The notes below the pieces were generated by a model. It saw only the letters and a program-made list of their open reading frames with translations. It was not told the origin of the DNA and did no database searches. From NCBI GenBank assembly GCA_977030845.1, contig OZ365116.1:18786001-18850000 (forward strand): a stretch of 64,000 nucleotides of DNA. Reading direction: 5' to 3'. Origin of the DNA: Fimbriosthenelais zetlandica. Lineage: Eukaryota. This document shows positions 1-40,472 of the stretch, piece after piece; within the stretch, counting starts at the first letter, position 1; every line of letters starts with the position of its first letter. The position numbers and the translations under genes were made by a program.

Positions 1-1229
1 GGTTATTCAGCCATAGAAATAGTATAGTCATGTCACAATGTTTTTTTTCTTTCTTCACTGGACCTACAATTGTTCCTAAATGTTTATGAAAAAGATCCAA
101 TACAAACACGGTGTTAACCCATAGAACAAAGATTTAACAAGAGGTTTGGAGTTTAGCCTCACTTGATGGTTCAGGGCAGGGAGATAAAGCGGTATTTGTA
201 TACTAAACACCTCGGAGGTCACAGTCCAAATTAACATCCAGGTATCAGTGTGGACTAGAGTTCCCATTGACAAACAGGCCCATCCCACCCAATAATCCCC
301 CAACGGTCCATTTCATCCCAGCCTATTTAGCCATTTCCCCAGTGGTGATACCCTGTCCTTCACCAGGCCAGATGCTCAAATTCAGGTATAGTTAAGAGAA
401 ACAATTCTCACCATAGTAGCAACCACTAACATTGTTACCACATGAATCAACTGGTACTTTCTTACAGTGTTCCTTATACAGATTTATGGACTTTCCTGCG
501 TCAGCATGTCAAATAAAGGATTTTTTTTGGTATATATAATGAAATACCTATTCCATTGAACAAGAGAGTGGGACATGTTACCTGGGCGGCATTTCTTTGG
601 CCTAATCAGTGTTGAGGTTTCCTGCTCGGGTGGACTGTATGGCAGGGGAGATGGTAGAAGACATCTTATCGGTGAAGGAAATGCTGACCCTGGGGCCTTC
701 GCCTGGCTGGGCCCGTATTCTCAACATGTCAGCTCCCATTTCACACCCATTGGTGGAGGACAAGTCCAATCCATTACTTTACTCAAAGCCTTTCAATGGC
801 TGCCGATCCTCCACAAACGTGAGGGCGTACGGCCCCGGCGCAAACTATTGTGAGATGGAACCAGAGGGCACTCTCACCAGAAGTATGCATATACGTATGT
901 AGCCTTATAAAATAATAAATAAAATATAGAAATACACTTAAAATAGGGTTAATGCTATATATTCCTTAATCACCAACTTGAGGGATTGCCTGAATGATTC
1001 ATATTAAGCATATCCCAGAAATGAGTCCTGCCTATTATGATATTTAAACTTTCTGGAAAGATTTCTTCATAATACTCATTGTCCCTTTCCAAGTGTCCCC
1101 CAAAGCCAACCAAGACCCAGTGAAGTGATCCCGTCAATGGAACTTATAATCAGGCACGGCAATGGTAACCTGTTGATTGGTCAGAGAGGAAAAGCAGACA
1201 AAGTGGCCACACTGACATGGCCAGGCCTA

Positions 1230-1243
1230 GTTACCATGGCAAC
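1230..1243. promoter_or_regulatory. Consensus RFX X-box
   Basis: GTTACCATGGCAAC. Confidence 0.4.
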
Positions 1244-4200
1244 ATCTTACTATTGAAGCCAGCCATAATGAACATGGCTTGGTCTTTGTGTGGATATGTC
1301 TATTGGAGACTTAGCTATTCTTCATGGATTTTCCTCCTGAGGAAACATCAATGAGTGAATTGGAAATAGATGGAGTAGAATCCAGAGAGCTTCAGGTAGC
1401 TAATGGGGCAGGGTTTATATTGTCAATATTGATGCAAATACCAGCCTTCTAGGTCCGCTTCAATGAAAGAAAGAAAGTTTCGCCTGTCGCCTAGGGGCTG
1501 TTATGACCCATATAGACTAAATCTTGGAGATTTTTTTTTGTCAAAAGAAAGCAGACACGAAGACGCAACCTCATGAAAGTTTTAAGTTCGATGGTTAAAA
1601 GCCTGCCTCAAAAGCATATTCGAAAATGCTTATTGAAATAATTGAAAAGTGAGATAATTGAAATGAAGTTTTTGCACAGACTTTAAGGTCGTTTCTAGAC
1701 AAAGCATGCCATTGACATATAGCAGCAGAGCATTGCACCTGTCGTACTAGTCTGGTGCCAAGATTGCCTCCAAATCCACTAGGTATAATCTTACATGGAT
1801 CCTGGATGAACTTTAAACCCATTAGATTCAGGAATGAAGCTAAAATATGTTCCCACGAATTGGAGCAAAGATTACAACCAAAGATACCATGGAAGAAAGA
1901 AGCGGTCCGTATAATATAATTCAACATAATAGGGTACAGTAAAGGATGTCAACTCAATTTTGAAAAGGGTGGGAATGGAAGGCATTCTAATTGAAACACA
2001 TAAAGGATGACACAGTCCAGAGTCATAAACCAAAAGTGAACTCCTGTTTTTCATGATTTCTCATTATGTCTGCAATTACTGAAATGATGAAATGGATTCG
2101 TTTTGGAATGATGAAAGCAGCGATGACTGCCATTTCCATTAAAATTCTCGCCTAAGGTGGCTTATTTTTGTCTGGAGTGATATACAGCAAGACAATCATG
2201 GACACATGAAGTACGATGAATAAAGTAAATAGGTCCCCATTGGCTGGCGGGTATGCAGCCTGGAATAGAAACAAAGCACTAACGGTACACTTCCCATATT
2301 GACGACGACACTAATGTATCCATAGGGAGGCTTGTGATCCAAACGTGAGTAAGAACTGATCAAAAGGTTTTTATATTAAAAATGAATAATAATCTGTCCC
2401 AAATACATCACAAGTAGTAAAAAATATCACTCTAGAGGCATGAGACAGGGAGAGCCCGTCATGAGAAAGGCCGCGAGTATAGGGTTTAATAGCTGTTGAT
2501 CATATGTTAGACGGTGGAGGGAGAGAGGAGTGAGTCTATCCAATGCCTTCAGGGAGTTCACCTTGGATTCACATTGTTGGTGTCGTGTTCCACTCACCTT
2601 TCACAGTCCTGGTTTAAAGCCAAATGAAAGGACCCCTAGTTTACATTTTACCTTCAGGGAGGAAAGGCTATACTCAAAGTAAGTGGAGAATCTTTGGTGA
2701 AGAAAGCCATATATATTAAAATAGACTGACCACAGAGCTCTGAGGGTCCGCCTGAGTCCACCAGTCAATTAGGACGAGAGAATGGTCAGTTTATTAACAC
2801 AGGTCCCCAAGACATTCCTCCCCAACTTCACTGCGTTGACCATTGACGAAACTCCTTTTGTTATCAATGTTTTCTCATAAAATCTCTTAAATTAGGAGTA
2901 ATCTCTAAAAACACATTTTTTAATAAGCGTAAATCTATTTCTTCCACACACTACCATTTTCCTGCCTCTGATCATAAGATAAGGGCTCCATTTGACATGA
3001 AAAATCAAAATGATGAAAAGACAGTGCCATATTTTCTTTCTCTGACATGTCACATAAGGAATCAAATGCCTTGAGACAGTTAAAACCCTGCGACGTATTC
3101 ACATGGAATCAATCATTTCATCAATCTAAGAATTCCCACAGGTTGTTAAAGCATTCCCGGCAGGAAAAGACAGATTAAAATTGGACTTGGGATGGATTAG
3201 CTGAACTGATTACCCAAAAACCCTCCCCCTCCTGAATCCATTTTAAACAGTTGAAGTTCAGGTGACAAGTGAAAAAATTAACAACTTCTAATTTAGCCTC
3301 AGGACACAAAGCTTTGACAGATCACTCAAAAGCGGATAGGGACTACATAAAGAAACCAGAGATTACATGAAACAAATGAATGAATCATTCATGTAAATAT
3401 TAGGCAGAAATATATCCACCATTGTGTAAATAATGAAAATAAAAACAAGTAACTCATACCGTCCGTCTAATGGATATGTCCTTCAATTCTAAATATTTAA
3501 AATTTCTAAGATACACAAGAAGCAAAAATCATTCGCTCTTAGGGGCAAAGAATCCATTATGCGTCTAGGTGAAGCGCTACATTATTAGAATATAGCTCGG
3601 TAAGTAATTAGGTGTCAAGTTGACAGTGATAGATATAAACGAGCTGTACAATAGTCCATCTCTCAAAGGGAACTTGTCAAATCAACACAAACAACAGCAG
3701 CAACAAAGCTGCCGCAAACGTCTTCAAAGGAAAGAGAAGAGTCTCTCCATTATTCTATGGTTAAACCCACAACTGTATACCCATTATTTCAAGACAGTTT
3801 AGCAGGTAGTGGGCCATAGAAGACTATATTCTTTCCTTAAGACCCTCCCTTAAGCGACTAATTTCTAAGGGGGTTGTAACAAGTGTTTACGACCCTGAAG
3901 ATACTTCAGGTAAAGTCCTACAGCAAGTGCTAATGGCAAACGCCTTGATTTGGACATAGGGACAATTGCCTTCTTTCCTAGAAGGAAAATATTGGAGTGA
4001 GGGTAAAATGTCCCTATGGTTCTCTATTGCTAGAGCGCTATACATCACGCAGGTCGTGCTTTGGGAGGGTTTATGATGTATTTGCTGGTAGAGTGGGGTT
4101 CCTCCCATGACAGGAGGGGTGAGTAATGTTGAGTTATGATTCTACCTTTCCACTGTGATGTATTAGCGTGGGGTCCATCCTGACAAGGACCTTCTTGCTT

Positions 4201-7200
4201 AGCTCTACTCCACTCACAATTATGTATAACAAAGGGCCACTTATGTATAAGCCACCCAGGCCACTTGGCTTGTGGAAAAATTACTTTCCCACTAACTTAT
4301 GAGTCCTCTTCAAATGTTTGAAAGATGAACTGAATTTCTGTTCTCTTTCGTTTGGCTTGGCCCTTATATCATAAGTGCATGTATAGGTCTACAGGGAGGT
4401 GGTTATATGGAACATAAACCAGACTCAGAAATATTCATCATTTCTGACATGAGATAATATAATAAATGTACGACTAAATTAGAGGAAACTCTATACTAAA
4501 CTTGGATAAAAAACCTATAACGATGACGAAAGGAAATTAATATGATGCTTTTAAGTGACACATTGCAATGTGATACAGTTATTTTTCACAACCTAATCAT
4601 TCTACACTTAACTAGGATTCCTAGAATTGATATGCCTGTATAGTACATGCCTGCTAGCAGACACCACATGAAAGCACAGACCTCCTAGGAGGACCACTAA
4701 CCACGAGGAGCCACTCTTCCCCTCTCATCTCTGAAATATTAAACTTATTCTCAACTCAAAGGCCAGATGTATGGGCAAGCCTGCCATATCTAACTCAAGC
4801 ACGACAGAAGGCTCCTGATTTATTGGAGTATCTCCTCTACATACCCTGGCGAAGATCTTGAGAGAAAGGAAGGATACTCGAGGCTGACCAATGTTAAGGA
4901 GGCCTACATATAGCATTCATTTACCAGGGGCTCCTGCCTTACTTAAATTTTGTATTGCAGACTTTGTGGTTAACGTGTACATATAAAAAAATATAAAGCA
5001 ACTCGTGAATCAAATATGACCCAGACAGAGGGCATGTGAAATTCTGCTGAATTTGGGAGCACTTGGACAATAAGAATATGACATCACGATGAATAATAAG
5101 AAAATTGTCTCGAGTGGACAAAAATTGTCTTGAAATTCTTCAGGCCCACGCTATGTCAGCCTTTCTCTCTCCACCTTGTCTTCTTGCATTACGAGAGGAC
5201 ACGTTTCACATCTCACTCACCAGGCGACGACATGGCGCTGCTATCACCTTGAAGGTCACGTGACGTCTCCAGCTCCACCACCCACTCTCCTGAGCGCCTT
5301 CCAGTCCACGCCCTATGGTAACCCCTATCACTGGCCACATTTACCATTGTCATAATTTTTTCTGCACAATATGATTCCAAGCTTGGAAGAGTAGCCTTGG
5401 AGAGGCAGGAGAGGATGGGTGGGTTTGAGAGTAAAGTGTTTTGATCTGTTTAACGTCAGGAGATGAGTGCGTGCTCAGTTCAGTACTTGTCATAATCATG
5501 ACGGATGGGGCTTCAGTACAATGGAGAAGAGGGACCACAAGGTTGGTTACTGGGAGACGATCATGTAGTAAATCAGCCTTCATTAAAATAAAATGTAGCT
5601 ATAGGTCTTTGACCAATGTGTTCATCACAAAATGAGGTCGAATGTCAGAGGTCTGCTTCCAAATGAGATTAATTAATTATAATAATTCATAAACCATCAG
5701 CTGTGATTTGGATGCACCTCGTGACATGACCTTGATGCATCATTCAGGCTTTCACCCTGGCTAGCAGTAAAGTGGTGAATGACAGAGAACTTTTATAATG
5801 GTAGACGTCAGCACCAAGGTCATGTGACACTATAGCAGAATGGCAACCAGTGGAGAGTGGTATCAAAGTGGCAGCTGTTGAAGTGCCACCCATATCGCCT
5901 CAAAACGAGGCAGATAGCAGACCTGATCACACCCATCACAAACTGAGATCAAATAAAAATTCAAGGGGCGACCAAACTCCTCAGACATTGAGTTCCAATA
6001 CCATTTCAATGGTAAGATTCAAGATGAATCGAGTCACGCCTTCCCAATGAAAAACTGAGGCAACTATTTTTATAGAGATACCTTTGGCAACTGGTCCTTT
6101 AAGAAGGAAATGAAGACCAAGTCTTAGACCAGCGGGTCATTGTCATCATAGACCTCTCGTGATGTTGCTGGAATTTTCATGTTTCCAGTAAACGTGTCCT
6201 GCGCCAGGTAGAAACATGAGAATAGGGAGCCATTGTTTCTCTCGCCAGTTCCTTTGATCTAGCCGCCACTGAGCGTCACCATACAAACTTCTTGTACACC
6301 AAGCAACCTGCAGCTTGTCCGTGGTGCTTAGGATGCTGGGTAAATGTTTAGCATTTCCTCAACGCGCAGCTTCAGAAGTTGGTAACCGGATCTGGTGTGG
6401 TTACTTAGGTGTTTGCAAAGAAAGGAATCTGGTCGTTCAGTTTGGAAAGAATGGAATAGTAGACCTAACTGGAGTCCTGATCCATTTTGTTTGTAGCTGT
6501 TATATCCAAAAATGAATAATAAGAAAGCAATGTATCTTTCAGATGGGGAAACTATTTTAGCTTGCTTTGACAGAAAATGGATCAGGTTACTCCGAATTAG
6601 CCGACTTATAAATTGAGAAAATAGTGTCTTTCCTAAACTGTGCCAACCATGTACTGAAGGTGAAGACATGTGGCATGAGTGAAATGTTTCCTTGGTAACG
6701 TTAGAGGTGACGTGTTAGCATGGTTAAAGACAAACACTGTAATTAGGTGAGGCAGGATGAGCCACACACCTGCTGAACGCCACATATACAAATAAATAAC
6801 ACTGACGTCATACAATCACAATCTGACAGTATGAAAACATCCCCGCCCTATAATAGCCTGAGAATAAATACCAAGGAATTCCACTGAAACTAAGAAAGGC
6901 ATTTAGTTTGGAGTCTTGCCCAGTAGATAGTCATAAAGGGCAGAAGATTATTCCCAAAGTTTCAATCAAACTTTCTCTTGAAAGTATATTTTTCTAATGC
7001 ATGAAATTAAACATTAGAGATGTTATTGCAATCATTCTCTTGCTGCAATATGCAAGCACTGAGATTTTGTAAAATTAGTAGTATAATGGTTATCTTGCAT
7101 GAGGCCCATATGCAACGCTGCATCGAGGCAATTCATGACTCCTTCTCACAACAAACTTCAATCAGGGCAAATATTTTAGCTGAGGATCGCAGTGCACAAG

Positions 7201-10200
7201 AGCACTGCAGGTTAATATTCTCCATCGGGCGAGGTTTATCAAACTCAAACCGGAAGCTTGTCCCTACACAAATAATGGTTAGAAATATTTGATACATCCA
7301 ACAGCCTAGCCATATCATAGCTTCTAAAGGTCCAGGTGGTGGGACAGCCATAAACCAGAAATTATTAATAGGCCTAGTAGGACTATATTATTACATATTG
7401 GCCAATAGACATTTTATATTTTATGGCAAGATGTTCGCAAGACCATATGTCCACAGCTGGAGTGAAGATCCTTCAAAAATACACCAGATCTTATCCTCAT
7501 TATCGCTCACTGAGTATTCTAGTCTTACAAAGACCTCATCCTCACCCACCACAAAACCTCTACTGACGTCATTTGTGACGTCATTGACAGATGCAAAGCT
7601 TACCATTTATACAGAAAACTTTGAACAATTGCAAAAGACAAACAAGTTAATGTAGTGCTTAAAATTATTGAACAATTAGTTCAAGCCTGTAAAAACCTGT
7701 CGTGATTTTGCCAGATGTCTTGTTTAAATATGGCCTAAGGATGCAGAGGGGGAAGAAACTAATCGAATTTTCCGCAGAAGTACAAGGGTCAATAGGTAAT
7801 TCTCTGAGAGAAGAACTGACCATTTAAAGCCTTTGTTATTAGACTAAATAATGCTGAGCTCATACACCACCTGGTGGGAGTACTTTCTGGCTATTTTCCT
7901 AATTCAAATTTCTCTCAGATTAAGAGATTCCTAAGAGCCCGGGTAAATATCCTGCGGCCTCTCTGTTGTGTGAACTTAATGGTAGCCCAGTCCCACACAG
8001 AAAACCAAATCTTCTTAAAGTTTTTGGCAATTTGACCATCAACCTAAGCCACAGAATACTTACAGAATAGCAAGACACAGAAAATGGAAAATGGCTTAAT
8101 GCGAATTGTTATAGAAATTCTTGATAGAATGTGATTCAAACCCTGCAATGGGAAACTGCATACCAAGATTGCCTCTCAGTGTAGGACAAGATTTACTTTG
8201 CCCCCTTGAGAGTCGTGCACGCTTTCTCACCATCCTTCACACACCAGTAGTTCACTATACTTATATCAAAAACCTGTATAAGCCTCAGGGCAGGATTACA
8301 GTGACAGAATAAACTTAACCTCTCTGCCTTCAACTAACACATTCTTCTTCAGATGACAAGCAATGCTGGGAATTCATGAGCTTCCGTGCCCAGGCGTAAC
8401 TATTGTCAACTTAGTCATCAAGAAAATTATTGTTTAAAACTGATTAAAATAACTATTTCTGGCAAGATCTCTCACAAAATAAATACATATTTTGAATGGT
8501 CAGATGGATATATTCATCCAAGGAAAAAGCCAATAGCTAGCTAAGACCAGCTCCAAACTATTCATATATTGTGCACGGACGTATGCAAAGCTTATAAGCC
8601 ATCTATTCCAGGCGGTGTGTGGTGAGGGGTGGAAAAAATCCTCTCTAATCTGAGTCTGGCTGAGCCATGCACCTCAGGCGCAGGCCTGAGGAAGAAAAAA
8701 GATCCTGTCTACGGAAATGAGGCAGAGACTCTCTCCAGCTACTGGTGTGTCTAATAGAAGGCCGTTTTACAGTCGACTTTATATAGAGAGAAAGCACAAC
8801 CATACATTCCGTTCTTTTCCGCCCATGTATTATTCTTTATAAATCAGGAATAATACGATAATTATCTTAATAGTAGTGATTTTCACAAAAAGGAAGAGGA
8901 AAAGCTCTGGCAAAGCTATGTTATTTGCAGGTCATATAGCTGGTACACAGAGCCTGGATTGGCATGTAGCATTGAGTATTAGAGGTGTGGAGACTCCAGG
9001 GATGCATGGATTAACAGCTACAAGACTGAGCCTCCTGACCAGCATGGGAGGATGTCCACACCTACACCAGGCACAACCTGCCACACACAAAATACGGTAT
9101 ATACTTCTTATAAATCACCCACACCAACATACCCTCAACAGGCTACACCTTTATACCCTAACAGTTTTCTAGATTCAGAAACGATACTGTCAGGTTTTAC
9201 ACAACTATCCACAAAACAGATCGATTGGAGATAAGATCTGCAGACACCTTTCTCACAAATCTACAGTTCCCAACATCTTAGATATGTTTTTCCTCCATTC
9301 ATGGCTAAGATATTCTGAAGAACAATTGCCTTTGCACAGCTCCATCTCCTCCCACCTGCGACCAGCCTCAGAGGAAGTGAGCCTTGAAGGCTGCGTGCGC
9401 ACCTTACAGGGGGCACCGGAAGGCAAGTGGTGCTATCTGTAGACACAGATTGGCCTAGACTTGTCGCTGTCTCTTAGAGGTGGAAAGGCTAACCATAGAG
9501 TCAGTGCTCCATTCTAGAGTAATAAAAATCTTATTCCATCAAGTAGTAAGGAGAAATATGAAACCATATTTTCCAACTTGATTTCTGAGCGTGAATTGTA
9601 AATCTTCATAGACAAAGGATGAAGACATAGGCAAGCTAAGAGGAAGGTGTATGAAAGGAAGATTGAGGCACCAGGACAACGGAAAGGAATGACCTTTCAA
9701 AGACAACAATAAATCTAATGACAATCTATTGCGAGTGTGGCATATAGGTTGACACCAGTACATACTTCACACCAATACCAGGCTGTACACCTTCACAATG
9801 AATAGTCCTACATTTGTAAGACATATTCCAGCCCCTCAGTGATCATTTAATAGAGTAGCATGCACATGTGGACTCATCAATTATTTTCATATAACATTTG
9901 CATTATATTCCGTATGACAATCCAAAGATCTCATATATACGGCACTGGAGATCCTCCATGCACCATCTCTGTACTGAACTGCTCCCAGTGGACAGTCAAT
10001 GATTGAAGAAGTGGGCAGCTTCTATGCCGCCCTGACATTTTCTTGCAACTGAATAATATATTACACGATGCTGACTGAATAGAACCGTCAGTCGAGATCC
10101 ATTTCTTTCTCCTCCAGATGAGAGCAACTTAAGACGGAATGAAAAGGCTTCAGAGAATGATAAAAGCTACATGTGAATGCTACCGAGTAGGCAGAGTTAT

Positions 10201-11840
10201 GGCATTTCCTGTAAAGAAAAGACTTTCAAAGCTGGAATTGAGCCTGCCCATTTTTCAAACCAAGAGAATAAAGCCCTAATTAGAGGAATTTAGTTTGACC
10301 TTTCAAAGGAAGCCATCTCCAATTTTCCTCTCACAAACTTGGATTAGTCTTAAAACTTTGCCAAGAGCACAAAGTGTGGACCTGTTTGCAGAAGCAGTCA
10401 AAAACCCGCGCACCTACTTTAATGCTTGGAAAATTATTTTCCACGAGAGTGGTTAAAGATTGAGCAATATTCATGGGTCATTAGGCGAGGTGTTATTTAA
10501 AACGGAAAGCAGGAGGAGCTATTGAAGACTGGCGTTTCTTGAGCTGCTCTTCTCCATGGGGGTATTTGTTACAGGGGTATAGCCTCGGATTCACATCAGT
10601 CACCAAACAACCAGGCTTCACAGAAAATAGCTGGACCAATATAATGAGCTGACGACAAGCACTGGCCATACATCATTCAGAGGGATGGTAATTGACAGGC
10701 AGGACACAGGTATATCCACATGGCTGCTATACCCTGGTCACACACTGGCTGACCAGCTGGCTTAGTGTGTCAAGGTGCTCTTTTCAGGAGGACGTAGAGA
10801 AGGGGCACAACAATCACTACCACCAACTCCAGCAAAGAAAAGAGAGCGATGGTAGCTTGGCATGTGATGCTATGAAAGACACTCCACAACAATGCTCCGG
10901 CCTCATTGGAAACCCATGAGGAGAAAAGGGATACAAAGGATTGCCCACTCAAAGCAAGCCTCAATTTTTTGTCCACGTTTTTCTCTCCATCCACCCAGTT
11001 GTGACTCACACTCGCCCTCCAGCGCTTGCTTCTTTTGGGTTATCCTTCCATCGCAAGAGATCAATGCACAAGCGACGATCCCACTGCTAATTAAACACTT
11101 TTTCCTCCTCCCAAGGGGCTCTTGGAATCGTTTTTATTTCTGGTAAATCAAGTGAACGCTTTGTAGTTACTTTGAGGAAAGGGGTTGTCTTTTTATTCCC
11201 CATTCACTGCGAAATTAGTAGGATGGAATAGGCATTTGTAAAAGCTTACCTTTTTGTGAAAAGAACCTGCAATCTTGAGATCTTGAGTGTTGAATAAGAA
11301 GAAACGTGAGTTTAATTCCCTGCCAATATTGCCCTGATCTGATCAAGCCTCAATGCATCCCCGCAGGCCTAAAAAGCACCAATTTTTTCCTCCTAATAAT
11401 GTGCTTTACCCACTAGCAAAATTGATCACCTTAAGCGTTCCACTATCAAGTGGGCCTTTTTCCTATTATTTTCCCCCAATGGGAAGAACAAAGGAGTATG
11501 AAAATATCAGTTTTGTTCAATCATCGGGGGGCTGCGTCTCAATGAAAAGTTATAGTATTTTTGCCAGGTATCCTAGCATGAGAATGCTAACAGGCCCGGA
11601 GCCAGGCACCCACTTTCTGGACGGATAATCAATAGTCTTGTTTGATAAGAAATAATGGACTACCTAGCCCTACAAGTCATTGATCATCGAAAGGGAAGAA
11701 ACATCTTGATGTAATAACTATAGTCTGAGCTGGAGAAATTCAATACTACACATTAAGAGGATAATGTTACCAGTCAGGCTATACCAGACGTTGAAAACTG
11801 CTATGACAGGCCATATTTACTTGCTGTGCGCAACAACACT

Positions 11841-11871
11841 GAGTGAGTGAGGGGGAGAGTGAGTGAGTGAG
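11841..11871 (+). repeat. Interrupted (GAGT)n microsatellite
   Basis: gagtgagtgagggggagagtgagtgagtgag. Confidence 0.75.
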
Positions 11872-25286: not shown

Positions 25287-25289
25287 TTA

Positions 25290-26124: not shown

Positions 26125-26190
26125 TTCTCCATTCCAAAGAGGTTTGACGATTCCACGGAATGCAGCCATTCGATACAGCGTTTCTGTTGC
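26125..26190 (-). CDS. TMEM135: TMEM135 coding exon 5 (66 nt): ATETLYRMAAFRGIVKPLWNGE
   Basis: Acceptor gttttgtttcttccag|GCA, donor GAA|gtatgt, phase 0-0. Matches human [22 protein letters not shown]. Confidence 0.93.
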
Positions 26191-29100: not shown

Positions 29101-32100
29101 ACTTTAAGCCAGGGACACACCAGATGGGAATAAAGTCAAACAATGGTCCAACCATTACCAACTAGACCTATAGCACAATAGAGTAGAGTTGCTCACTGAT
29201 TTGCTCACATATTTAGTGTATGGTGGCCTCATGATATCACCCATACATCAAAAGTGACCAGGAGCCAGCAGAGAGATCCACGTGAGCAGAGTGAGGCTGG
29301 TGATATTGCGGGTGAGTGCCTGGCTAGACTGTCAGAGTAGAAAGGTCTGCCGTCATTTCTGACAATTCTTTCATATTTCATGTTGTTCGCTAGGGACTGA
29401 CCCAAGCCATACAACACAAGCTTTGTCTTATAAGTGTCATCTTTTGAATAATGCATTTATATAAAGCATACTGGAGATATATCATTGATATAATGCTGCA
29501 ACTAAGAGAGAAATGGACTTGCTCATAAGAAGTGGTTTCTTCAAGGTTTATTTACCAATAAAATAAGTTTAAGAGTAAGGACCATGTTTTATTTGCTTAT
29601 TTTTGGCATTTCTGTTGTTGCAGAATAATATTGATATGTACCTCACCCTTACAATATTCTCAGTTTCTGACTATATGACTCCAGGTCAAATTTACTGTCA
29701 CTGGAATCAGTATCAGAATGAGGACATGAGCATGAGTGTGTCTGAGACATGATTAAAGTATAGAAGCTCGTGCTGGGATACTCAGCATGCCATCATAGCA
29801 CCGTCACCTGGGTGTTAAATGCACCAACAATAAACTGAAGGATGAAAGCACGGTACCAGTCCATCGCCTTTCATGCTCCAGAAGGGCGATCGTTTTCCGG
29901 AGCCAGGCTGAATTATTCAGATGTCCCCGCTTTGATTGCAGTGTGTGTGTGTCGGTGGGTGGGGGTCGGTTCATGGCTTCTGTCCTTGGCAATCCCGCCT
30001 TTTCAATCCCCCCACACGCTTTCTTTCCTCTCCTTTCTACCACATCCATCCTTGGCTTCCCACCTGCGACTCCTATACTCCAGCCACCCACCTATTCCTC
30101 CAGTACACTCCAGGGAGAGATAAAAGGCGTTGGAGCTGAGGTAATAGACTTGTTCTTGCCAGGAAAGACCACCCTTGTCGGCAAGGATTACATGGATGCA
30201 AGTTTCAATTATGATAATGAAATCTAACGTCAAGTTATACTATTATATTGCTGTGCTTTGGGGCTAGTGTATACTTTAATGCTATTAAGATGTCATTATG
30301 TAATTCATCTTAATTTGAGCATATGACACCTTAAGATAGTGCAACGTGTAGATTGCCATTTAATATTCAAAATATGGGTATAGGAGGTAGTTCTAGTCTA
30401 GTATAAGAGGGTGGTATCATTCCTCCAGTGTTTGGCGTGCCTCCAGGGTGTCAAGGGTCAGCGGTGCGCCTCATTAACCTGATGCTGAGTCACACAGGTG
30501 AGATGTGTACTAAATGTCAACCACGACCATCTCCTCCCAGTCTCCAGCTTCCTCCCTACATGCACTCACATAGCCCACTAATCTAAATCATTATCATAAC
30601 CTGTGCATCTCCAATAGTCCTCTACAGCATAAGTAAATCACTTGATTTTTTCAATCTCTGGAGGCGGATAATTCAAGAAAGGACATCATCTGGTATCATT
30701 ATTTTGTTCCACCTGCAGAGAGACTCCTGCATTCCTCTAGGGAACATGAATACTACCCTACTTCATTGAACACTTAGTACTATTGGTCAAAAGTAGGTCC
30801 TGGGTTAATTGACCCAGGAATGGCTGACTCACCCACCAATGTTAAAGTTGCATGACCCGGGCGTTTGTTTTGCACAAATCAATTACAGGACTTTCTCTTA
30901 CAAGGCTTACCCAGTCCCTCTCAGAGAAATGCTTATTAAAACCACTCTTTATTGGCTCAAGAACTTTTTCCGAGAACGCCAATTTCCTTTGAACAGAACT
31001 CAGCATGTATGGGGGAAGACAATCGGGTCAATTCATTCCATGTTGCGTATTATCTAGGACATATTTCAATGACCGAAATGTTAGAGAGGTAGAGGAGATA
31101 TACCTGCATGCTTAGAGACTTGCCAACTGTTTCACTGAGGACTCTCTCCCTCAGTCTGTGAACTCTTTCTCCCCATCCCTCCCTCAGATCCATTCCCTCA
31201 ATTGTCCATCATTAGGGTCAACCAGTAGCAATCGATAGTGAGAACATAGTTGACCTCTGCCAACCAATCCCCTATATTGAGCAGATACCTCCCACATGCA
31301 TCATCCCATGTGACTACCTCAATGTTACTGTCTCTTAACACGGTTTTACATATGAAAGCTTTGAAGCAGCAGACCTCACCACCTTTCATCATCTACACAA
31401 TAGACCCTCTCTATACCACCACAAATGCAACACGAGCTGTTAAAAGTTGGAGCAGCTAATTTGCCCAACAGAAAACCCGATCTTCCTCCCTTTAGACAGG
31501 AACTATTAATTCACCTGTCGGCGCTCCTGCACTAAAATGTCCATGATCCAAAGCCTTATACATAAAAGCCCAGAGGAATAGGCGCTAAGCACGCAAAGTC
31601 AGGGTTAGTCATCCTCCACTCTCCAGCCCGACTGCCCCCAATTTAATCTGTTTATATTAAAAAGACCTTTTTGCTGACAAAGCTGCTTTTCTAAACCGTT
31701 CATTCATCATAAGGCTCAACTTAAAATCTTTGACAAGCATAGTACATATTTGAGTGCTTGGAAGGAAAATACCATATAAGAGCGGCACCGTAAAAAGGAA
31801 CACAGATCTGCATTTTATCAGAAGTGATTGCTTTTACTTGTTGCTGGAAAAAGTGCATGCAACAGCTGTGTCTTTAAACTTCCAGTAATGTTCTTTTTCA
31901 TTTGGCTGATAACTGAGTCGCTAGCGAGCAAAGTACAGACATACAGTAAGGGGGACATTTATTATTGACAGAAAGCACAAGCCAGAAAGCAAGGTTGAGC
32001 TGAAGCAGAGGCAGAGGCAATGTAATATGGTTATGGTAGAAGGGCCGGGCAAGGCACTGACTTGACCTTGCTTCATATTGGTGATGGGATCTGAGACCAT

Positions 32101-35100
32101 TGGGGAGTCCCAACGCGAAGATATATTGATTTTGTCATAGGGATATGTTACTTCATTTAGAAGTAAATAGCAGCGTTTCGTGGACTCACCCAATATCCAG
32201 CAGACATCTTGTGTCGGTGGCAGAAGTTGGGAGCTAGAGTCAAATTACCGATAAAGAAATGGAATTAACTATCTTAAATTGGGTAGTTTCAGTAGACTTT
32301 GACTCTCATACTTTCTTTCTCAAGTGTAGGTCTTTTTGACGGCAAACTTCCCAAAGTCTTCTTAATCTTTTACATGACAACTTAGTCCCTTTCCATTCTA
32401 GCCAAAAAAAAATGGCATAAAAAGTCTGAAGAGAGGGCAGTTACCTGAATTAGATTAAGAAGTGTCCTCCCCTCAAGACAGAAGAGAATGACAGCCAAGA
32501 GCAAAAATAACTTAAGAGCAATTACTTAAGTGAGTGTACCTCAGGAAAAAGACATCTATTTCCATACATATTTACAGCCACGCTAATTAGGTAAAGCAGA
32601 CTCTGGCAAGAGTTGTGACACATAAAAAATAACTGAGCTTGAACTCAGGGATGTCAAATACATGCGTCTTCTGTAACAATATATTCTTAAGCCCTAACTA
32701 TTTGCCTTGTAAATTAAGTTACACTTTACATAATCTATCAAACAAGTTTGGAAGCCAGCACCCTTCCGTTTTTCTCCTAGGAAATCACATCTTCAGAGAA
32801 CAAATAGCCCTGGTGGAGAAATCACCATAATCACTTGAAAACTCGAATAAAGCACAGATATCTTGAAGGGATCATTCACTGATCTTACATATCAGTCTGC
32901 CTCGGGGGTCAAATCTAAATCACTCCAGTGTAGAATTGATTACATTTCTCGTGACCAGCTTATGATTGATCATCCCGTTTTTGTCTCAGGACTAAATTCG
33001 GTTATAAAAATGATGCATTGATCCAGGAATGGACTCGGTGTGTACGTCTGAAGCTGTTGGAATAAGAAGAGTCCTGATCAGAATCCCTGGCCTGGCTTCT
33101 CAGATGATGGATGTAATGCCAAGCCCCTGTTAGCTCTGGTCTAAAGTTTAACTCAAGATGGTGGGAAGAAAGGAATGGAGGGGAATGGGAGAAAGAAGAG
33201 GAAGTAGTATGAGTCGGAGGAAGAAAAATTATATGAAGAAGATGACGACCAGAGTAAGGGAATTGCTGGGTAATTAATCAGCTGAAGCCAGTAATAGACA
33301 GGAACATGAGGAAAGCCCAGAAGACTGAAGCTTACAGTTAACTTCTATGCTGAAGCAGCAAACACCTCATCCATCTAAATCTGGATTCATTAAAGCAAAC
33401 TTCAAGAGAGGAAAGACTGAGATCCGGAAATGGACCGTTTCCTTTTGAAGGAGCAGCAGGACAGCTTCTATGGAACTGCAAGGAGGCAAGAATAGAGAGC
33501 AATGGACCTAATTCTGGACCTAAATGAAACTGAAGCCATTTAGATGTCCCAACCTGAAAAAAACACCCAACAGCTTTCAGAACAAGCCAGTGGTTCATTT
33601 AATTGCTCGAGCAATATATGTCCAGGTGAAAGGAAAATTGATAGGACACCCGACCATTTCTCTCTGCTGGTGAAAGGTTAGGCCTAAGCCTTTAAGAGAC
33701 AATCTGGACTATAAAATCACTAGTCTTCATGAATGGCTTTAGAGAGAAAAGTGGACCTTTATTCCCATAGAGCAGTTAGCCTAGGGACTTGGTCATATAG
33801 TATTTTATGGCTGTACCTAGTGACAAGATAAAATCCACCTTCATGGCCCTAAGGAAGAGGAGTAGGAGGATTAATGGCATCTCATATAGCTCCTCCACCT
33901 CTCTGTAAGTCACTTCCAAGCGCCCTGGATCATCAGCCAATGATTCCTAAAAGCCATCATTGGAGCTAAGCGCTGACATTACAGCGCACCTAGTATCGCT
34001 TTGTCAGATGGCAGACTTCCATCCCCACCTATTACCCATCATCAGGGATTTCCCTCAGGGTGAGTGATGGTCATTGTCAATGCTATAGGTAGTGATCCAG
34101 TGAATGGGCAGACTTCTGGACTGACCTCTGGTCACTTTGTGGTGGTGGTGGTCAGCCTGCGGGAGGACTAACCTGTTGGCTGTATGATCGCCTCTAACAT
34201 GTAACATTCATTGCGTGAACACTGGAGGATCTTGGCCGTCAGAAGACGGAGTGAGACCATAAGTCAGGCTGTAGCTGGGGGATTTATGACGAGGCACCAG
34301 AAATAGACCAATAAGATCTGATGGAAGCTACTATGATCACAAGTTATGGAAAGGGTCATCAAACGCCTGGGTCTGTGTGATGTTGAAATGGTAGGAGATG
34401 GGTGACATCATGTCACAAAGCCACGACACAGACAGCTCCCATCTAGAAGGTTCCATCAATGGCTTATGCTGTCCATGAAATCTCTTCCACGGGAATCAGA
34501 AATCAGGTAAAAGAAAGAGAGAAAGAAAGAAATTTCAGCAGGAGTGAGAGCTATATTATAATAGGTCTATCATTTTTTTCTGATCTTAACAGGCACCTGA
34601 TGGACAAAAGAACGAAGCTCATTTTCCATCAACATCAAAGGCTGGAGAGCATGAGGTAATGAAGAGAGGATTCAGTCCATACCGTAGCTATGGATCCCTT
34701 CAGTTCCAGTAGATGGAAAATGGGTTAATTTGGACAGTTTTTCTCTTTTCTCCAATCATCATTAGATTTCAAGGCGCATCAATTTTGACTCGATTTGCTG
34801 AGTCCCAGTCTGTTTGGGCTAAGCTCGAAGCTTCAACTCAAATTCATAACTCAATCTCATCATTCCATGCCTTTCGTCTGTTCTCAAACCTTGTGTTTTG
34901 TACAAAGAATTAACCAGGCTCGTGAATGGGATCATATTGAGAAGAAGGAGCACAGCTTTTTAAGGATAATCCTCTTGATCTCCAGAGTATTCTGATGGGA
35001 TATGGAGTACAGATGGTCACAGCCTTGCTTATGGTTGCCTACAGACTGGAGTCAGATAAAATATATCTGTATGATCTCAGATGGCAACCACAATTTCAAG

Positions 35101-38100
35101 TGAGCTACTGAGAGCATGCAAGCAATGGAAACAATGGCAAGAATTCATGATACATTAGTTTAGCATTAGGCAAACCTTTGAAGAGAAGGGACAAACCCGA
35201 AATGCACATCAACTAATGCAATTTCTGAGATTATCCCAGGCTCGCGTACCAAGGGAATTCATGGCCAGGAGAAGGGAGGGGGGATCACCACCCAAACCGA
35301 CAGAATGGCCAGAGGGGGAGTAAAGAGTTGTGAAAGGCAGCAGGGTGTTATGAATTAATTGCTGATTATTCATCGTACGTTTGGCCGAGGGGCTAGAGGG
35401 GGTGGGAGAAGATTTAAAAGGGGGGTAATGAGGTAATGGATATGTGGGCGAGTGAGGGGATGTGATTGCAAAGCAAGGATGAGGGCGAGATAGGGAGCAA
35501 GGGGAGGAGAGGGAGGGAAGAGAAGAGAAGAGTGGGGTTATTGTGGAGAAAGACATTGTGTCTCCCTAAGGTGCTGGTTCATGAAAAGTTACACGGAGAG
35601 GATCCCCTGAGGATCCAAACAGACATGGAGAAGACTATAAGATCTGATGGTCCTGATGTTTGAAGTCCACATTTATTTCTCAGGGTGTCAATGGTATCAT
35701 GCTGCAAACATCTTTCCATAATATTCATTATATTGACCCAAGGAACTCTCAGTTTTAAACTATATTATATGTAAGTTAGGGCCTGGCCAAAGTCTCCCCC
35801 TGCTCAGCAGGAAGGAGAAAAAGACCCAGTGTTTACCTAGTATGCTCCAACTGCTGAGTCGGGCCTAGAGCTCGCCTTTTGTTGTGTTATTCTAACTGAT
35901 CACAATCCATTTAGCTTCAGGCAAGAAATGACACCTACCGGCTTGTCATCATATTGCTTTTAGGCAGCGCACAAACTGATGACGTGGCACCCAGAATGTT
36001 CCTCCATGGCGGGCAGAGGAGGAAAAACAGAGAGACAACTGTTTATGGAGATACAAATAAATAGATGGTCAATAAATACGGGATTGTTGTGATTCCATTT
36101 TTCCATTGTTGATGCTGGATGCATGCTAGGAGGAATAGCTTGAGGAATGTATATCTTGGAGGGACATACTCGAGTTCTGGAGACTAGAAACATGTTGAGG
36201 GGTATATCGTTTCAGGAGAGTTTAGGGTTTCATTTTGTTGTGGATTTTCAGGGAGCTTCATCCGCCAGTAGCCGGAGGGACTAACTCGGTATTCTAACTC
36301 CTTGGCAGCAAGAGACACAGACATAAAGGAAGGGAAAGTTTCCACACTTGAATCAAGAAGCTTTGCAATCAGTAATTATGGAAATACTTGGAGGGTGGTC
36401 ACTGATGAATCGCATGCTAAATCAATATGGTCTAAATTACATTCATATATTCACCTTCGAGGTAGGATTAATTTATCAAGTGTGGAATCTATATGAGCAG
36501 AATTAGCTTTATAATTAGCTTCCATGGTGCATGGGAGCGATCTGACATTTCTTGAACCTTCACATATTATTCATATTCTCACCATATTTATCAGGCTTGA
36601 GGCCACAGACTTCTTGCTGATATTTTTAGATATTCAAGGAAGTCAATCTAAGTTAATTCCCAACACCGACTGGGAGCGCGGGCTGTGATGTGGGCATCGG
36701 AAACAGTATGAAAGTGTCGGTACCTTCAGATCCCAGATTGGGCCACTCCACCCCTGTACCTCGACCAGGAGGAAGGGTAAAGAGGGGACACTTAGCCTGA
36801 GGCGTATACGGAGAGAAGCTAGGGTGTCAACCTATGTCACCCCTCACGGTATACCATGGAGGAACCCCGTGGAGGAAGGCGGTATGGGACGGGAAGAAGG
36901 GCATCCAGGGAAGCCTACAGATGGATACAAGCCCTCCGGGCATGGATCAACCCAGGAGGAAGCCAGGAGGGGGGTGATATGAGGGGGTGAAATGGGACCA
37001 TGCTCAGCAGCTAGTCTTCTTAGCTTCCTCCCGCATTCAACTGGGAACAGGGCTAACTTTAGTGATGTTTTATCAATCTAAATAGCCAGGAATAATATTG
37101 TCTAGAGAAACTAGTTTCTTTTGATTTAATTGGAAAATATATATCCAAGCATAACTGAATTCTGGCGAGGCGCTGATAGATAGACATGAGTCAGAAAAAA
37201 CTTATTAATAATAAATATCATTTATGCTTTCCATCAAGTCCAAAGCCATATATTATATTAGACTTATGATTTTGCAGTGCTCATCATACTGGCGTCTGCA
37301 CATTTTCCATATAAATCAATTCATCTAATCACGGGCCGGCGGGAGGAGCAGGGCATGGACATTAATGAACGCGAACACATTTTATGAAACGCGAGGCAAG
37401 AGAACAAAACTTCCAATCTAAACTTCATTACACCGCTCCCATCCGCCATGATTACATGCAGAGGAACCTCGCTATATTTGGAGCCATAAATAAGGGAAAA
37501 TCCCTCACGTGGTCAGCCACATAGACTTAACAGATAATTACTTGCATATTGCACTACAGACATGCACGTTCCTTTGTGTCATAACGGGCAATGACCTGCT
37601 CACAGAGGCACTATTCTGAGATAATCATTTTCTTGGCCAAATGTAAATCTTTCATTGGGCTCTCTCAGAAGGAGGGGGAAGCAGAGGAAGAGGGCAAGTA
37701 AAGAACGAGGTAACTTTGTCTTCTAATGTGGGCCCAATATAGAGAAAGCACTTAACCACTAGGATTCATCATAGATCAAACTTGAAGGTGCTCTCAGCCC
37801 AGGCCAGTAATCCACTTCTATACCATAGCGGGCTATAGAGAAGAAGTCCATCTCTTATGCTTTATGGCCCAGTAATGCAGGCGGTACAATAAGACCTACT
37901 ATAGGGATATATAAGTTATAGGTGGGAAAGGTCATTATTTAAGGTGAAGATGTATTGAGAGTTAGGGGGGAGGGTAGTAGTTAACCAGTTTAATTTTCTG
38001 GGTTATTGTTCTAAGCTTGATTGGGGCCTACTAATCAAGATCCATCTGCCAGCCGTTGTCTCTCTCCTAATCTGTTTTCTCCAGGAGGAGCAGGTCTGGA

Positions 38101-38986
38101 GCAGATATCTATCCAACATGAGCAGCTCTCAGGCTGAGGGATTCCCCCTGGAGAAGGAGTGAGCAGATTGCCATCAGCTGGCCACGAGAACCAACAAATA
38201 AGCCGCGTTCACCAATGGTCTGTAGCCGGGATTGGTGGAGCTTTGGTTGAGTCCTACCTCAAACTAAAATGACAGGCTGACCAGGTATCTAATTATGTAA
38301 CGTCTCATTGGGACAAAAGGTGTAAGGCCACCATTACCATGATGGAAATGGGATATCTGGCCTTATATTTTATGCAGTTAAGGTCTAGATATGCACTTAA
38401 GTGCGCCAAGTGGGTCTGAAAATAGAATTAGTCGATACCACAATAATGGCAAAAAATCGGCCACATAACATGGGCAAGTGTGCAATACCAGATATATCAG
38501 CTTGACACAAAGTCCTGATAGACACAGATAAACTGACTGTGGGTTGATAGTGGAAGGAAGGTTAGAAGTTCATCAGTCATATCACTGATATCAGTTATAA
38601 CATTTATACTCAAGGTGACGTTAGAATGCAGACCTAGAGTATAAAAGAAAACTTACATGTTTTCAACTCATTTAAACAATTTATTATACTCTTCTCCGCC
38701 AATCTGACGCTATCTAAAGCACCCGGGATATATATTTTTAAAAGGCTTAAGCATTACTAGATAAAGATTCCCATAAATAATTCTCACAGAGGGAGAAGTT
38801 CTATGTCACTAAGCAGTTCATGAAGTAGCACTTGGTCAGCTGTATGGTAAAGATTGAATGAAAAATCGTAAAGACCGTGACAAGCATCTTCAACATGGGA
38901 GTCATTTCCTGATTATTTGGCGAGGATTGAGGATGCCAGACGATGTGACGGTGGAGGGGTGGGCTGTAGGGAGATGGGCAGAGTTA

Positions 38987-39016
38987 GGGGTGGGGGGTGG
39001 GGGGTGGGGGGTGGGG
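38987..39016 (+). repeat. (GGGGGGT)n-type G-tract, G-quadruplex-forming potential
   Basis: ggggtggggggtggggggtggggggtgggg: five G-runs with single-T loops. Confidence 0.8.
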
Positions 39017-40263
39017 ATCTGGAGTGACGTACAAGTAGAAGGGGGGTGGCAGGCAGGACAAGATAGCAGCTATCTGATGGTATCACTTGTCAAGCCGGCT
39101 TAGCTGGCACAAGAATCATGATTCCCTGGGAGGGGGAGTTTTACTAAAGCTTCCAACTCTATGTACCCTCAAACAAGGCCCACCAGCTAAGTTACTCAGA
39201 AATGTTCGCATTAAAATATTTTCACTAATTACAAACATAAGGCTTTAAAATAAACTTTCCGACCGACGACCATGCATGGTTTCATCAAGCTTAAGGCTTC
39301 ATCAAGCTTACCTCCCAGATTAACCAACTCCTCCATACCCCGTCACCAACAAGGCCTCACATCACTCAGACTGTGAAGTAGCCCACTCTCTGATCAATAA
39401 CTTTGTAAATCAAGTCAGGATTTATGACACCCAACACTACTTGTGGGATCGTTGGGTCAATATTTTAATCACCGGGGGGCAATCGTCCCCGGGAAGCCAT
39501 GAGACGCTGGGCCGGTGTGGGTATCCCTAAACGCCACCAATCATTCCACGGATGAGGCGGCCTCCTCAATATCAGAGACCACCAGCTCTAATGACAGGCA
39601 TTTAATAGGCAATGGATCTGCCAATCCATCTTACCATTAGTGAAACCATCTCAAAGGATCCAAATCAGTGATCAGTGATCAAAGACGGCCAGACGTGCAG
39701 GATGGCCGGGCTGATGAAGATTCAGCCAGGCCTGCAGGTCTCCCATCTTACATCAATACCAGCTCAATACAAATATCGGCCACATTCCCAAAACTAATCT
39801 CATTGGGGAGAAAGAAGTAAGAGGCAATTGATGGTTACACTTAAAAGCTGCTGCAGCAGGAGACTGAAGCATGGCTCCAGGCCAAGATCAGGCGGATTAC
39901 GAGTGAAGGTTTAATTTTGAAAAATCTGGTTAGCTTTCCAACAAGGGAGTTACATGGGAGGAGAGTGGTAGTGAAGTACAATACTGAAAAATACAGATAT
40001 CAATGAAATAGTCGCGTAGTAGCCTGACCTCATGCTACCCCAGCACTGGTCTATGTATCTTTAACTGTGTTTTGACATGAACGAGGGTAACGCGCAAGTG
40101 TATATCCTATTAAATGACAGTGCCTAGATGGCGCTGGACGCATGCCCGAGCCAAGGTCAGACATTTACATAACATCTCTCTTACCAATCTACATGTACAG
40201 GTAAAGGTCTGTCTGATGATCCACAGATAATACATTGTGGGTCAGTGAGAGAGATGAGAAGAT

Positions 40264-40283
40264 CCAGTTACCATGGTAACTGG
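40264..40283. promoter_or_regulatory. 20-bp perfect palindrome containing a consensus RFX X-box
   Basis: CCAGTTACCATGGTAACTGG; core GTTACCATGGTAAC at 40267-40280. Confidence 0.55.
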
Positions 40284-40472
40284 CATGTATAAACATATCA
40301 CAGGTCCTTGCTTCTGGCAGTGATGATTCGAGAAGACAAAGTACCTAGTTATTTCAAAGCATGGATCTCTTCAAAATCATAAGCCTACAAAGGAAAATAC
40401 CAAAACGCATACGGTACTTAATAATAGATCTAACCAACAAAACAGTAAAATTTAAAATCTAAAATAACTTAC

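What the first reader, a model, noticed from the sequence alone, without database searches (positions are those of the whole stretch)
1..40472. Only TMEM135 introns 4-6 are huge: bystander-gene signature of a regulatory block
Seen: intron lengths are 481, 1081 and 880 bp (introns 1-3), then 14282, 11051 and at least 15026 bp (introns 4-6). Few recognisable TE relics account for the expansion, and motif clusters are frequent. From memory, introns 4-6 are also the largest in human TMEM135 (tens of kb each). Inference: the same three introns have hosted fz4 long-range enhancers in both lineages, which would explain the retained linkage.
Basis: partly seen in the sequence, partly recalled or inferred. 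Interest (0 to 1): 0.75.

Follow-up and report, generated by a model that had tools for sequence, protein, structure and literature searches.

The report
Three giant introns in TMEM135 beside frizzled-4
A housekeeping-type gene (TMEM135) next to the Wnt receptor gene frizzled-4 keeps 92% of its intron DNA in three huge, almost repeat-free introns, which fits, but does not prove, these introns carrying frizzled-4's distant switches.

Summary
TMEM135 lies on the minus strand, with 13 GT-AG exons encoding 460 aa. Introns 1-3 are 481, 1081 and 880 bp; introns 4 and 5 are 14,282 and 11,051 bp. Intron 6 runs off the window and is 23,329 bp in full; introns 7-12 are 87-1,279 bp.

The giant introns are about 95% single-copy DNA. 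The exceptions are one young 2.17-kb transposon, an 84-bp MITE and a tRNA-Gly gene. No nested gene was found.

Comparisons give mixed support for the interpretation.
- In spotted gar the same three introns are the largest (19.8, 16.8, 21.4 kb).
- Intron 4 is only 404 bp in Lineus and 59 bp in Capitella, so the "same three introns" pattern is not ancestral.
- Only intron 6 is the largest intron in all four species that have large TMEM135 introns.
- fz4 and TMEM135 are adjacent in the window, Lineus, Capitella and two metagenomic animal contigs.
- In amphioxus they lie 9.2 Mb apart, and there TMEM135 is compact with introns 4-6 of 1 kb or less.

No conserved non-coding sequence was found, but every available relative is too distant for that test. 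The bystander-gene (regulatory block) reading is plausible but unproven. It would be a new member of a known kind.

The parts
60931..62748 (-). frizzled-4 (fz4) coding region, a single open reading frame
   Evidence: ORF of 605 aa. The best hits are Frizzled-4 proteins of many animals, 64-66% identical to Lineus and Owenia, carrying PF01392 and PF01534.
43311..60930 (.). 17.6-kb intergenic spacer between the fz4 stop and the TMEM135 start (both genes on the same strand, fz4 upstream)
   Evidence: Coordinates. No intra-locus repeats and no hits to 20 random genomic samples. AT skew falls to about 0 here. The whole-genome repeat search of this stretch could not be scored.
43170..43310 (-). TMEM135 exon 1 (ATG at 43310)
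   Evidence: PF15982 match of 47 bits, profile match at E = 3e-17, donor GT at 43169.
42689..43169 (-). intron 1, 481 bp
   Evidence: GT..AG read.
42561..42688 (-). TMEM135 exon 2
   Evidence: 77% identical to Lineus TMEM135 residues 48-94. Splice sites.
41480..42560 (-). intron 2, 1081 bp
41387..41479 (-). TMEM135 exon 3 (93 nt, the same length as in Lineus and Capitella)
40507..41386 (-). intron 3, 880 bp
40473..40506 (-). TMEM135 exon 4 (34 nt)
   Evidence: 75% identical to Capitella residues 120-131. The reading frame closes only with these borders.
26191..40472 (-). intron 4, 14,282 bp, single-copy DNA
   Evidence: Length. No other genomic copy: 4 first-look candidates, 3 scored, none significant. 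No intra-locus repeat. No Pfam hit in its longest ORFs.
26125..26190 (-). TMEM135 exon 5 (66 nt)
   Evidence: 61-65% identical to several orthologues. It also aligns to gar exon 5 at the DNA level.
15074..26124 (-). intron 5, 11,051 bp (8,880 bp without the transposon)
   Evidence: Length. Outside the transposon, only a satellite-like AG-rich stretch near 20259-20359 and an ~85-bp fragment at 23809-23898 have other genomic copies.
23933..26103 (+). young non-autonomous transposon, 2,171 bp, ending 21 bp from the exon 5 donor site
   Evidence: At least 39 scored copies at 99-100% identity on many contigs, with 1,894 first-look candidates. No ORF above 94 aa, no terminal inverted or long terminal repeats, a 34-nt hairpin at one end, G-rich skew of 0.27.
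15027..15073 (-). TMEM135 exon 6 (47 nt)
   Evidence: 71% identical to Lineus and Babylonia. Aligns to Lineus exon 6 at the DNA level. Borders.
1..15026 (-). window part of intron 6 (full length 23,329 bp; it continues 8,303 bp beyond the window start)
   Evidence: Exon 7 was found 8.3 kb upstream of the window. The window part has no other genomic copy: 24 first-look candidates, 23 scored, none significant. The off-window part holds an 84-bp MITE and a tRNA-Gly(GCC) gene.

Best explanation
TMEM135 here is most likely a bystander gene in an old fz4-TMEM135 gene pair. Its introns 4-6 (48.7 kb of nearly repeat-free, long-transcribed DNA) are retained mainly because they carry distant cis-regulatory elements that act on the fz4 promoter 17.6 kb upstream of the TMEM135 start. 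Breaking the pair would then strip fz4 of part of its control region.

Shown here: the gene model, the intron sizes, the single-copy nature of the introns, adjacency of the two genes in several lineages, the matching intron pattern in gar, and the compact gene in amphioxus where the pair is split.

Inferred: that the unique intronic DNA is regulatory, and that its target is fz4 rather than TMEM135.

Intron 6 is the only recurrent large intron. Introns 4 and 5 appear to have grown separately in this lineage and in vertebrates.
For: 1. Introns 4-6 hold 92% of the intron DNA, and the other nine introns are 87-1,279 bp.
2. The expansion is not repeat-driven.
   - Only about 2.6 kb of 48.7 kb has other genomic copies.
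   - There are no intra-locus repeats in 84 kb.
   - 10-kb blocks of the locus carry less high-copy repeat than 20 random samples of the same chromosome (median 0 against 2%, Mann-Whitney p = 0.001).
   - First-look repeat candidates number 4 and 24 for introns 4 and 6, against 42, 87 and 2,917 for three control stretches.
3. No nested gene, known RNA or TE protein domain was found.
4. The two genes are adjacent in several lineages.
   - Window: 17.6 kb apart on the same strand.
   - Lineus: 31.6 kb apart on the same strand.
   - Capitella: 4.2 kb apart, head-to-head.
   - Two metagenomic animal contigs, L055 and L050: head-to-head.
5. Intron 6 is the largest intron in the window, Lineus, Capitella and gar, and gar shares the 4-5-6 pattern (rho 0.71, p = 0.009).
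6. In amphioxus fz4 and TMEM135 are 9.2 Mb apart. There introns 4-6 are 154, 120 and 441 bp in the B. belcheri copy and 957, 108 and 587 bp in the other hybrid assembly.
7. In human trabecular-meshwork cells, a preprint assigns FZD4 as the contact target of the glaucoma GWAS locus named TMEM135 (10.64898/2026.03.12.711121).
8. These features match the bystander predictions of Irimia et al. 2012.
Against: - No conserved non-coding element was found between this locus and any other. The one candidate was A-rich low-complexity sequence.
- Introns 4 and 5 are tiny in Lineus and Capitella even though fz4 is adjacent there, so adjacency does not require these introns to be large.
- The unlinked class rests on one lineage (amphioxus).
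- Gar adjacency to fzd4 was not checked here.
- Motif content is at background except for a marginal TCF/LEF excess.
- CpG depletion is uniform and marks no unmethylated islands.
- No RNA, chromatin or contact data exist for this animal.
- Old repeats below roughly 75% identity would escape the searches used.
Confidence: 0.45

Rival explanations
1. Neutral, lineage-specific intron growth. Introns 4-6 are old, decayed insertions and slippage products that drifted to large size. The match with gar is chance, or reflects a shared tolerance of the introns around the micro-exons E4-E7. The fz4 linkage is unrelated to them.
For: - Introns 4 and 5 are tiny in Lineus and Capitella, so their growth is lineage-specific.
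- No sequence conservation was detected.
- Insertion is still ongoing: a young 2.17-kb TE, a MITE and a tRNA gene lie in these introns.
- Two of three control 10-kb stretches also lacked strong repeats, so unique DNA is common in this genome.
- Other first-stage notes flag several more giant-intron genes in this genome.
Against: - The three largest introns coincide in window and gar (1 in 220 by chance for 12 shared introns).
- Intron 6 is the largest in four of five lineages.
- The locus is poorer in high-copy repeats than the chromosome background.
- The compact gene occurs exactly where the linkage is lost.
Confidence: 0.3
2. The large introns serve TMEM135 itself. They would hold its own enhancers, an internal alternative promoter upstream of exon 7, or unannotated non-coding transcripts, rather than fz4 elements.
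For: - The giant introns split the N-terminal TMEM135 domain exons (E1-E6) from a tightly packed 3' exon cluster (E7-E13 within 2.8 kb). That layout would suit an internal promoter.
- The AT skew shows the whole unit is transcribed as one block.
Against: - Amphioxus TMEM135 does without large introns 4-6, as does the compact gene on contig L041.
- No conserved extra exon was found by tblastx between orthologous introns.
- No Rfam family was found apart from the tRNA.
Confidence: 0.15
3. The linkage is kept by a shared promoter region (co-regulation of a head-to-head pair), not by intronic enhancers. Intron size would then be a separate matter.
For: Capitella and the two metagenomic contigs have fz4 and TMEM135 head-to-head, with starts 4.2 kb, about 3.8 kb and under 0.5 kb apart.
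Against: In the window and in Lineus the genes are in tandem, 17.6 and 31.6 kb apart, yet still adjacent. A bidirectional promoter therefore cannot be the constraint there.
Confidence: 0.1

Closest known systems
Genomic regulatory blocks with bystander genes (Kikuta et al. 2007; conserved ancestral microsyntenic pairs of Irimia et al. 2012, PMC3514665, such as Isl-Scaper and Otx-Ehbp1)
   Same: - A developmental signalling gene lies next to an unrelated housekeeping-type gene.
- The pair is adjacent in distant animal lineages.
- The bystander has several introns above 10 kb, three here. Irimia et al. report an average of 2.7 in human bystanders against 0.9-1.1 in controls.
   Different: - No conserved non-coding elements or enhancers have been shown here.
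- The target is a receptor gene, not a transcription factor.
- The pair fz4-TMEM135 is not named in the main text of any paper I could search. Supplementary tables were not available.
Shh-Lmbr1 (the ZRS limb enhancer in an intron of the neighbouring gene; Shh regulatory block, PMC3364491)
   Same: The proposed mechanism is the same: an intron of a neighbouring, functionally unrelated gene carries a long-range enhancer of the developmental gene.
   Different: The ZRS is a defined, deeply conserved and functionally tested element. Here there is only indirect evidence from intron size, repeat content and synteny.
Transposon-poor regions around developmental genes (established knowledge, not checked in a paper here)
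   Same: About 66 kb of introns and spacer contain almost no high-copy repeats compared with random samples of the same chromosome.
   Different: The depletion is not absolute: a very young 2.17-kb element has inserted in intron 5. The background sample is also small (200 kb).

Membership tests
Genomic regulatory block / bystander gene (criteria of Irimia et al. 2012) | A developmental regulator lies next to a functionally unrelated non-developmental gene | tested here: met
   fz4 is identified by the Fz and Frizzled domains and Frizzled-4 orthologues. TMEM135 is identified by PF15982 and a family profile. The two families are unrelated.
Genomic regulatory block / bystander gene (criteria of Irimia et al. 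2012) | [quoted passage not shown] | tested here: met
   53.0 kb of introns against 1.4 kb of coding sequence. Three introns measure 14.3, 11.1 and 23.3 kb.
Genomic regulatory block / bystander gene (criteria of Irimia et al. 2012) | Microsynteny of the pair conserved across distant lineages | tested here: met
   The genes are adjacent in the window, Lineus, Capitella and two metagenomic animal contigs, and are broken apart in amphioxus. For vertebrates the support comes only from papers.
Genomic regulatory block / bystander gene (criteria of Irimia et al. 2012) | Highly conserved non-coding regions inside the bystander's introns | tested here: inconclusive
   No non-exonic match to Lineus, Capitella, amphioxus, gar, the 76%-identity relative's fz4 flanks or 27 metagenomic loci. 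All of these are too diverged, or cover the wrong part, for a fair test.
Genomic regulatory block / bystander gene (criteria of Irimia et al. 2012) | Enhancers in the bystander's introns that act on the developmental gene | not testable with these tools
   No RNA or DNA runs were listed for this animal. The only related evidence is a human promoter-contact assignment of the TMEM135 GWAS locus to FZD4.
TMEM135 gene family | N-terminal TMEM135 cysteine-rich domain and conserved exon structure | tested here: met
   PF15982 scores above its cut-off on exons 1-2. The profile covers positions 1-446 of 454. There are 13 exons with the same lengths and borders as in Lineus and Capitella.

The most novel reading that the evidence does not exclude
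fz4-TMEM135 may be a pre-bilaterian regulatory block. On this reading the intron between TMEM135 exons 6 and 7 has harboured fz4 control elements since before protostomes and vertebrates split. That would explain why it is the largest intron in a vertebrate, a nemertean, an annelid and this animal. Amphioxus would be a natural loss-of-linkage experiment in which the intron collapsed after fz4 moved 9 Mb away.
Probability: 0.25. Interest if true: 0.65.

Novelty: new member of a known kind. Interest (0 to 1): 0.45.

Why it matters
If true, this adds a Wnt receptor gene to the list of ancient regulatory blocks. It also gives a compact test case: a 55-kb bystander gene with three defined introns. 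There is a built-in comparative control, because amphioxus has the pair split and the introns small. The case would show that one particular intron (intron 6) can be a long-lived enhancer harbour, while its neighbours expand and contract lineage by lineage. It also bears on human genetics. Disease-associated variants labelled 'TMEM135' may act through FZD4, as one promoter-contact study already proposes for glaucoma.

Tried and rejected
- **RNA evidence for the gene model.** No sequencing run was listed for either query. The gene model rests on homology, canonical splice sites and an open frame.
- **Conserved non-coding elements.** Sensitive blastn and tblastx were run against Lineus, Capitella, two amphioxus assemblies, gar, a 76%-identity relative's fz4 locus and 27 metagenomic loci. 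Only exons matched. The single non-exonic hit was A-rich low-complexity sequence.
- **CpG observed/expected as a proxy for methylation domains.** It is uniformly 0.3-0.6 across the locus and the genome, so it is uninformative.
- **Nested genes or RNAs.** No Rfam family and no tRNA in the window, and no Pfam hit in the ten longest intronic ORFs.
- **Motif clusters.** Ten of 11 motif classes are at background, and the TCF/LEF excess is marginal and dispersed.
- **Whole-genome repeat search of the intergenic spacer.** It could not be scored because it exceeded the letter limit.
- **Failed look-ups.** TMEM135 of B. lanceolatum and Babylonia failed because those isoforms are not on record.
- **Supplementary tables.** Those of the two microsynteny papers are not held.
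- **Hamster protein model.** It joins FZD4 to TMEM135 exon 2. I treated it only as a hint of adjacency, probably an annotation artefact.
- **Human sequence.** None was used or looked up.
Full report
**Gene content of the window.** The window is G000:C27:18786001-18850000 of a 447-Mb assembly. It contains no N. Its frizzled-4 protein is 64-66% identical to those of nemerteans, annelids, brachiopods and molluscs, and 90% identical to an unnamed transcript-sized contig. The animal is therefore a lophotrochozoan-grade protostome whose own records are not named. fz4 is a single ORF at 60931-62748 on the minus strand. TMEM135 starts 17.6 kb downstream of it on the same strand.

**Checking the observation.** Pfam PF15982 hits exons 1 and 2. 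I read the splice sites directly and mapped the short exons with full-length TMEM135 proteins obtained from an exon-1 search and with a 13-protein profile. The exons in the window are:
- E1 43310-43170
- E2 42688-42561
- E3 41479-41387
- E4 40506-40473
- E5 26190-26125
- E6 15073-15027

All have AG/GT borders. The intron lengths are 481, 1081, 880, 14282 and 11051 bp, and intron 6 begins at 15026.

The profile search placed the rest of the gene 8.3-11.1 kb beyond the window start. After fetching that DNA, exons 7-13 completed an open 460-aa reading frame. Intron 6 is 23,329 bp, and introns 7-12 are 140, 1279, 189, 87, 91 and 111 bp. Introns 4-6 hold 92% of the intron DNA. The exon lengths and borders are the same as in Lineus and Capitella, which supports the micro-exons E4-E7. 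No RNA run was listed to confirm them.

**What the giant introns are made of.** A self-comparison of the 84-kb extended locus found no interspersed repeat at all, only three short palindromes. Whole-genome searches gave the following.
- Intron 4 and the 15-kb window part of intron 6 have no other copy. They gave 4 and 24 first-look candidates, all but the unscorable self-match scored, none significant.
- Intron 5 contains a 2,171-bp element at 23933-26103. It has at least 39 scored copies at 99-100% identity and about 1,900 first-look candidates. It has no coding capacity and no terminal repeats, it carries a terminal hairpin, and it ends 21 bp from the exon-5 donor.
- The rest of intron 5 has only an AG-rich satellite-like stretch and an ~85-bp fragment with other copies.
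- The off-window part of intron 6 holds an 84-bp palindromic MITE with about 1,750 first-look candidates. It also holds a tRNA-Gly(GCC) gene, confirmed by ARAGORN and by Rfam at 66.7 bits.

The MITE and transposon searches serve as positive controls for the tool. Three control 10-kb stretches gave 2,917, 87 and 42 first-look candidates.

I also compared 10-kb blocks of the locus with 20 random 10-kb samples of the same chromosome. The locus blocks carry less high-copy repeat (median 0 against 2%, mean 5.7%; Mann-Whitney p = 0.001).

In total about 2.6 kb of 48.7 kb is recognisably repeated. The refuting condition 'mostly recent repeats' is not met. Repeats older than roughly 75% identity would not have been seen.

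No Rfam family, no tRNA within the window, no Pfam domain in the ten longest intronic ORFs, and no tblastx match between orthologous introns was found. The plus-strand AT skew is +0.06 to +0.12 from the last exon to the start codon and about 0.01 on both sides. The giant introns therefore carry the compositional mark of long-standing transcription.

**Orthologous intron lengths.** For the 12 introns shared by all species:

| Species | Intron lengths, bp (1 to 12) |
|---|---|
| Window | 481, 1081, 880, 14282, 11051, 23329, 140, 1279, 189, 87, 91, 111 |
| Spotted gar | 1620, 1692, 7144, 19771, 16821, 21402, 461, 606, 940, 133, 2232, 731 |
| Lineus | 2420, 10378, 9831, 404, 7813, 16327, 1244, 3532, 948, 498, 420, 4681 |
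| Capitella | 822, 3272, 1214, 59, 57, 5171, 281, 382, 52, 230, 57, 43 |
| Amphioxus (B. floridae x japonicum) | 750, 964, 1040, 957, 108, 587, 1104, 588, 3765, 5237, 1255, 1154 |

- In the B. belcheri copy, introns 4-6 are 154, 120 and 441 bp.
The same three introns are the largest (1 in 220 by chance), and rho is 0.71 with p = 0.009.
- The two other protostomes do not share it: intron 4 is tiny in both, intron 5 is tiny in Capitella, and introns 2-3 are large.
- Intron 6 is the largest intron in four of the five lineages.
- The simplest history is an ancestrally large intron 6, with separate growth of introns 4 and 5 in the window's lineage and in vertebrates.

**Linkage of the two genes.**
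- Lineus has fz4 31.6 kb upstream of TMEM135 on the same strand, the same layout as the window.
- Capitella has them head-to-head, 4.2 kb apart.
- Two metagenomic animal contigs also have a frizzled gene head-to-head with TMEM135 exon 1. On L055 the fz4 is 49-53% identical to all bilaterian Fz4 proteins. On L050 the frizzled is 31-33% identical.
- Head-to-head is therefore probably the older layout, and the window and Lineus share an inversion.
- In amphioxus (B. belcheri haplotype, CM033053.1) fz4 lies at 18.60 Mb and TMEM135 at 9.36 Mb, beside an enoyl-CoA hydratase gene. There the gene is compact. This natural experiment favours a link between adjacency and intron size, but it is a single lineage.
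- A compact TMEM135 (8 kb) on contig L041 could not be scored for linkage.
- For vertebrates I rely on papers. FZD4 deletions take TMEM135 with them. A 2026 preprint names FZD4 as the promoter-contact target of the glaucoma locus 'TMEM135'.

**Sequence conservation and motifs.** All cross-lineage DNA matches are fz4 or TMEM135 exons. The only exception was low-complexity A-rich DNA. The closest accessible relative (76% Fz4 identity) was available only for 10 kb either side of fz4 and shares no non-coding match. This test is inconclusive rather than negative. Motif densities equal the genomic background, except TCF/LEF at 15 sites against 7 expected (P = 0.0055 uncorrected for 11 tests) and with no clustering. 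CpG depletion is uniform.

**Verdict.** The locus meets three of the five bystander-gene criteria of Irimia et al. 2012. A fourth is inconclusive and the fifth is untestable here. I put the regulatory reading at about 0.45, neutral lineage-specific growth at 0.3, TMEM135-intrinsic functions at 0.15, and a promoter-sharing explanation of the linkage at 0.1. No paper in the searchable library names this pair as a microsyntenic or regulatory block. If real, it is a new member of a known kind. The same scan has flagged the fz4-TMEM135 adjacency and several other 'bystander' candidates in this genome.

Noticed in passing
window 23933-26103: A 2,171-bp non-coding element is present in dozens to perhaps about 1,900 copies at 99-100% identity across the genome. 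This is a very recently active, unclassified non-autonomous transposon. It has a 34-nt terminal hairpin and strong G-over-C skew, and it is inserted 21 bp from the exon-5 donor of TMEM135.
   Followed up: partly
L005 6262-6332 (3.7 kb beyond the window start, plus strand, inside TMEM135 intron 6): A tRNA-Gly(GCC) gene lies antisense to TMEM135 (ARAGORN, and Rfam at 66.7 bits). Near-identical copies form tandem arrays with a period of about 1.26 kb on contig C1.
   Followed up: partly
L005 8788-8871 (1.2 kb beyond the window start): An 84-bp palindromic MITE-like element. It has about 1,750 first-look candidates genome-wide and occurs in 6 of 20 random 10-kb samples.
   Followed up: partly
window 1-43310 versus 43400-64000: Plus-strand AT skew is +0.06 to +0.12 across the whole TMEM135 transcription unit and drops to about 0.01 exactly at its two ends. 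This is a strand-composition footprint of transcription that marks the gene borders without annotation.
   Followed up: yes
whole window and 20 random samples of contig C27: CpG observed/expected is 0.3-0.65 almost everywhere (19 of 20 samples), with no CpG-rich islands at the fz4 or TMEM135 starts. This suggests genome-wide rather than mosaic CpG depletion, which is unusual for an invertebrate.
   Followed up: no
L008 24720-28576 (amphioxus TMEM135, intron between the exons for residues 349-374 and 375-407): The largest amphioxus intron (5.2 kb) is filled with more than 20 tandem copies of a ~115-bp unit resembling the following TMEM135 exon. Its size comes from exon-derived tandem duplication.
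   Followed up: no
L050 8070-10129 and L055 4648-10159 (metagenomic contigs): Two unidentified animals have a frizzled gene head-to-head with TMEM135 exon 1, under 0.5 kb and about 3.8 kb apart. The L055 Fz4 is equally distant (about 50%) from all bilaterian Fz4 proteins, which hints that the pair predates Bilateria.
   Followed up: partly
protein P0087 (Cricetulus griseus 'frizzled class receptor 4', 710 aa): This public gene model joins FZD4 to a stretch matching TMEM135 exon 2 (residues 644-693). It is probably an annotation chimera of two neighbouring genes.
   Followed up: partly
window 44451-44479: Two TCF/LEF core motifs lie 21 bp apart just upstream of the TMEM135 start, inside the array noted by another first-stage finding (s1-184686). 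Elsewhere in the locus such motifs are scattered.
   Followed up: partly
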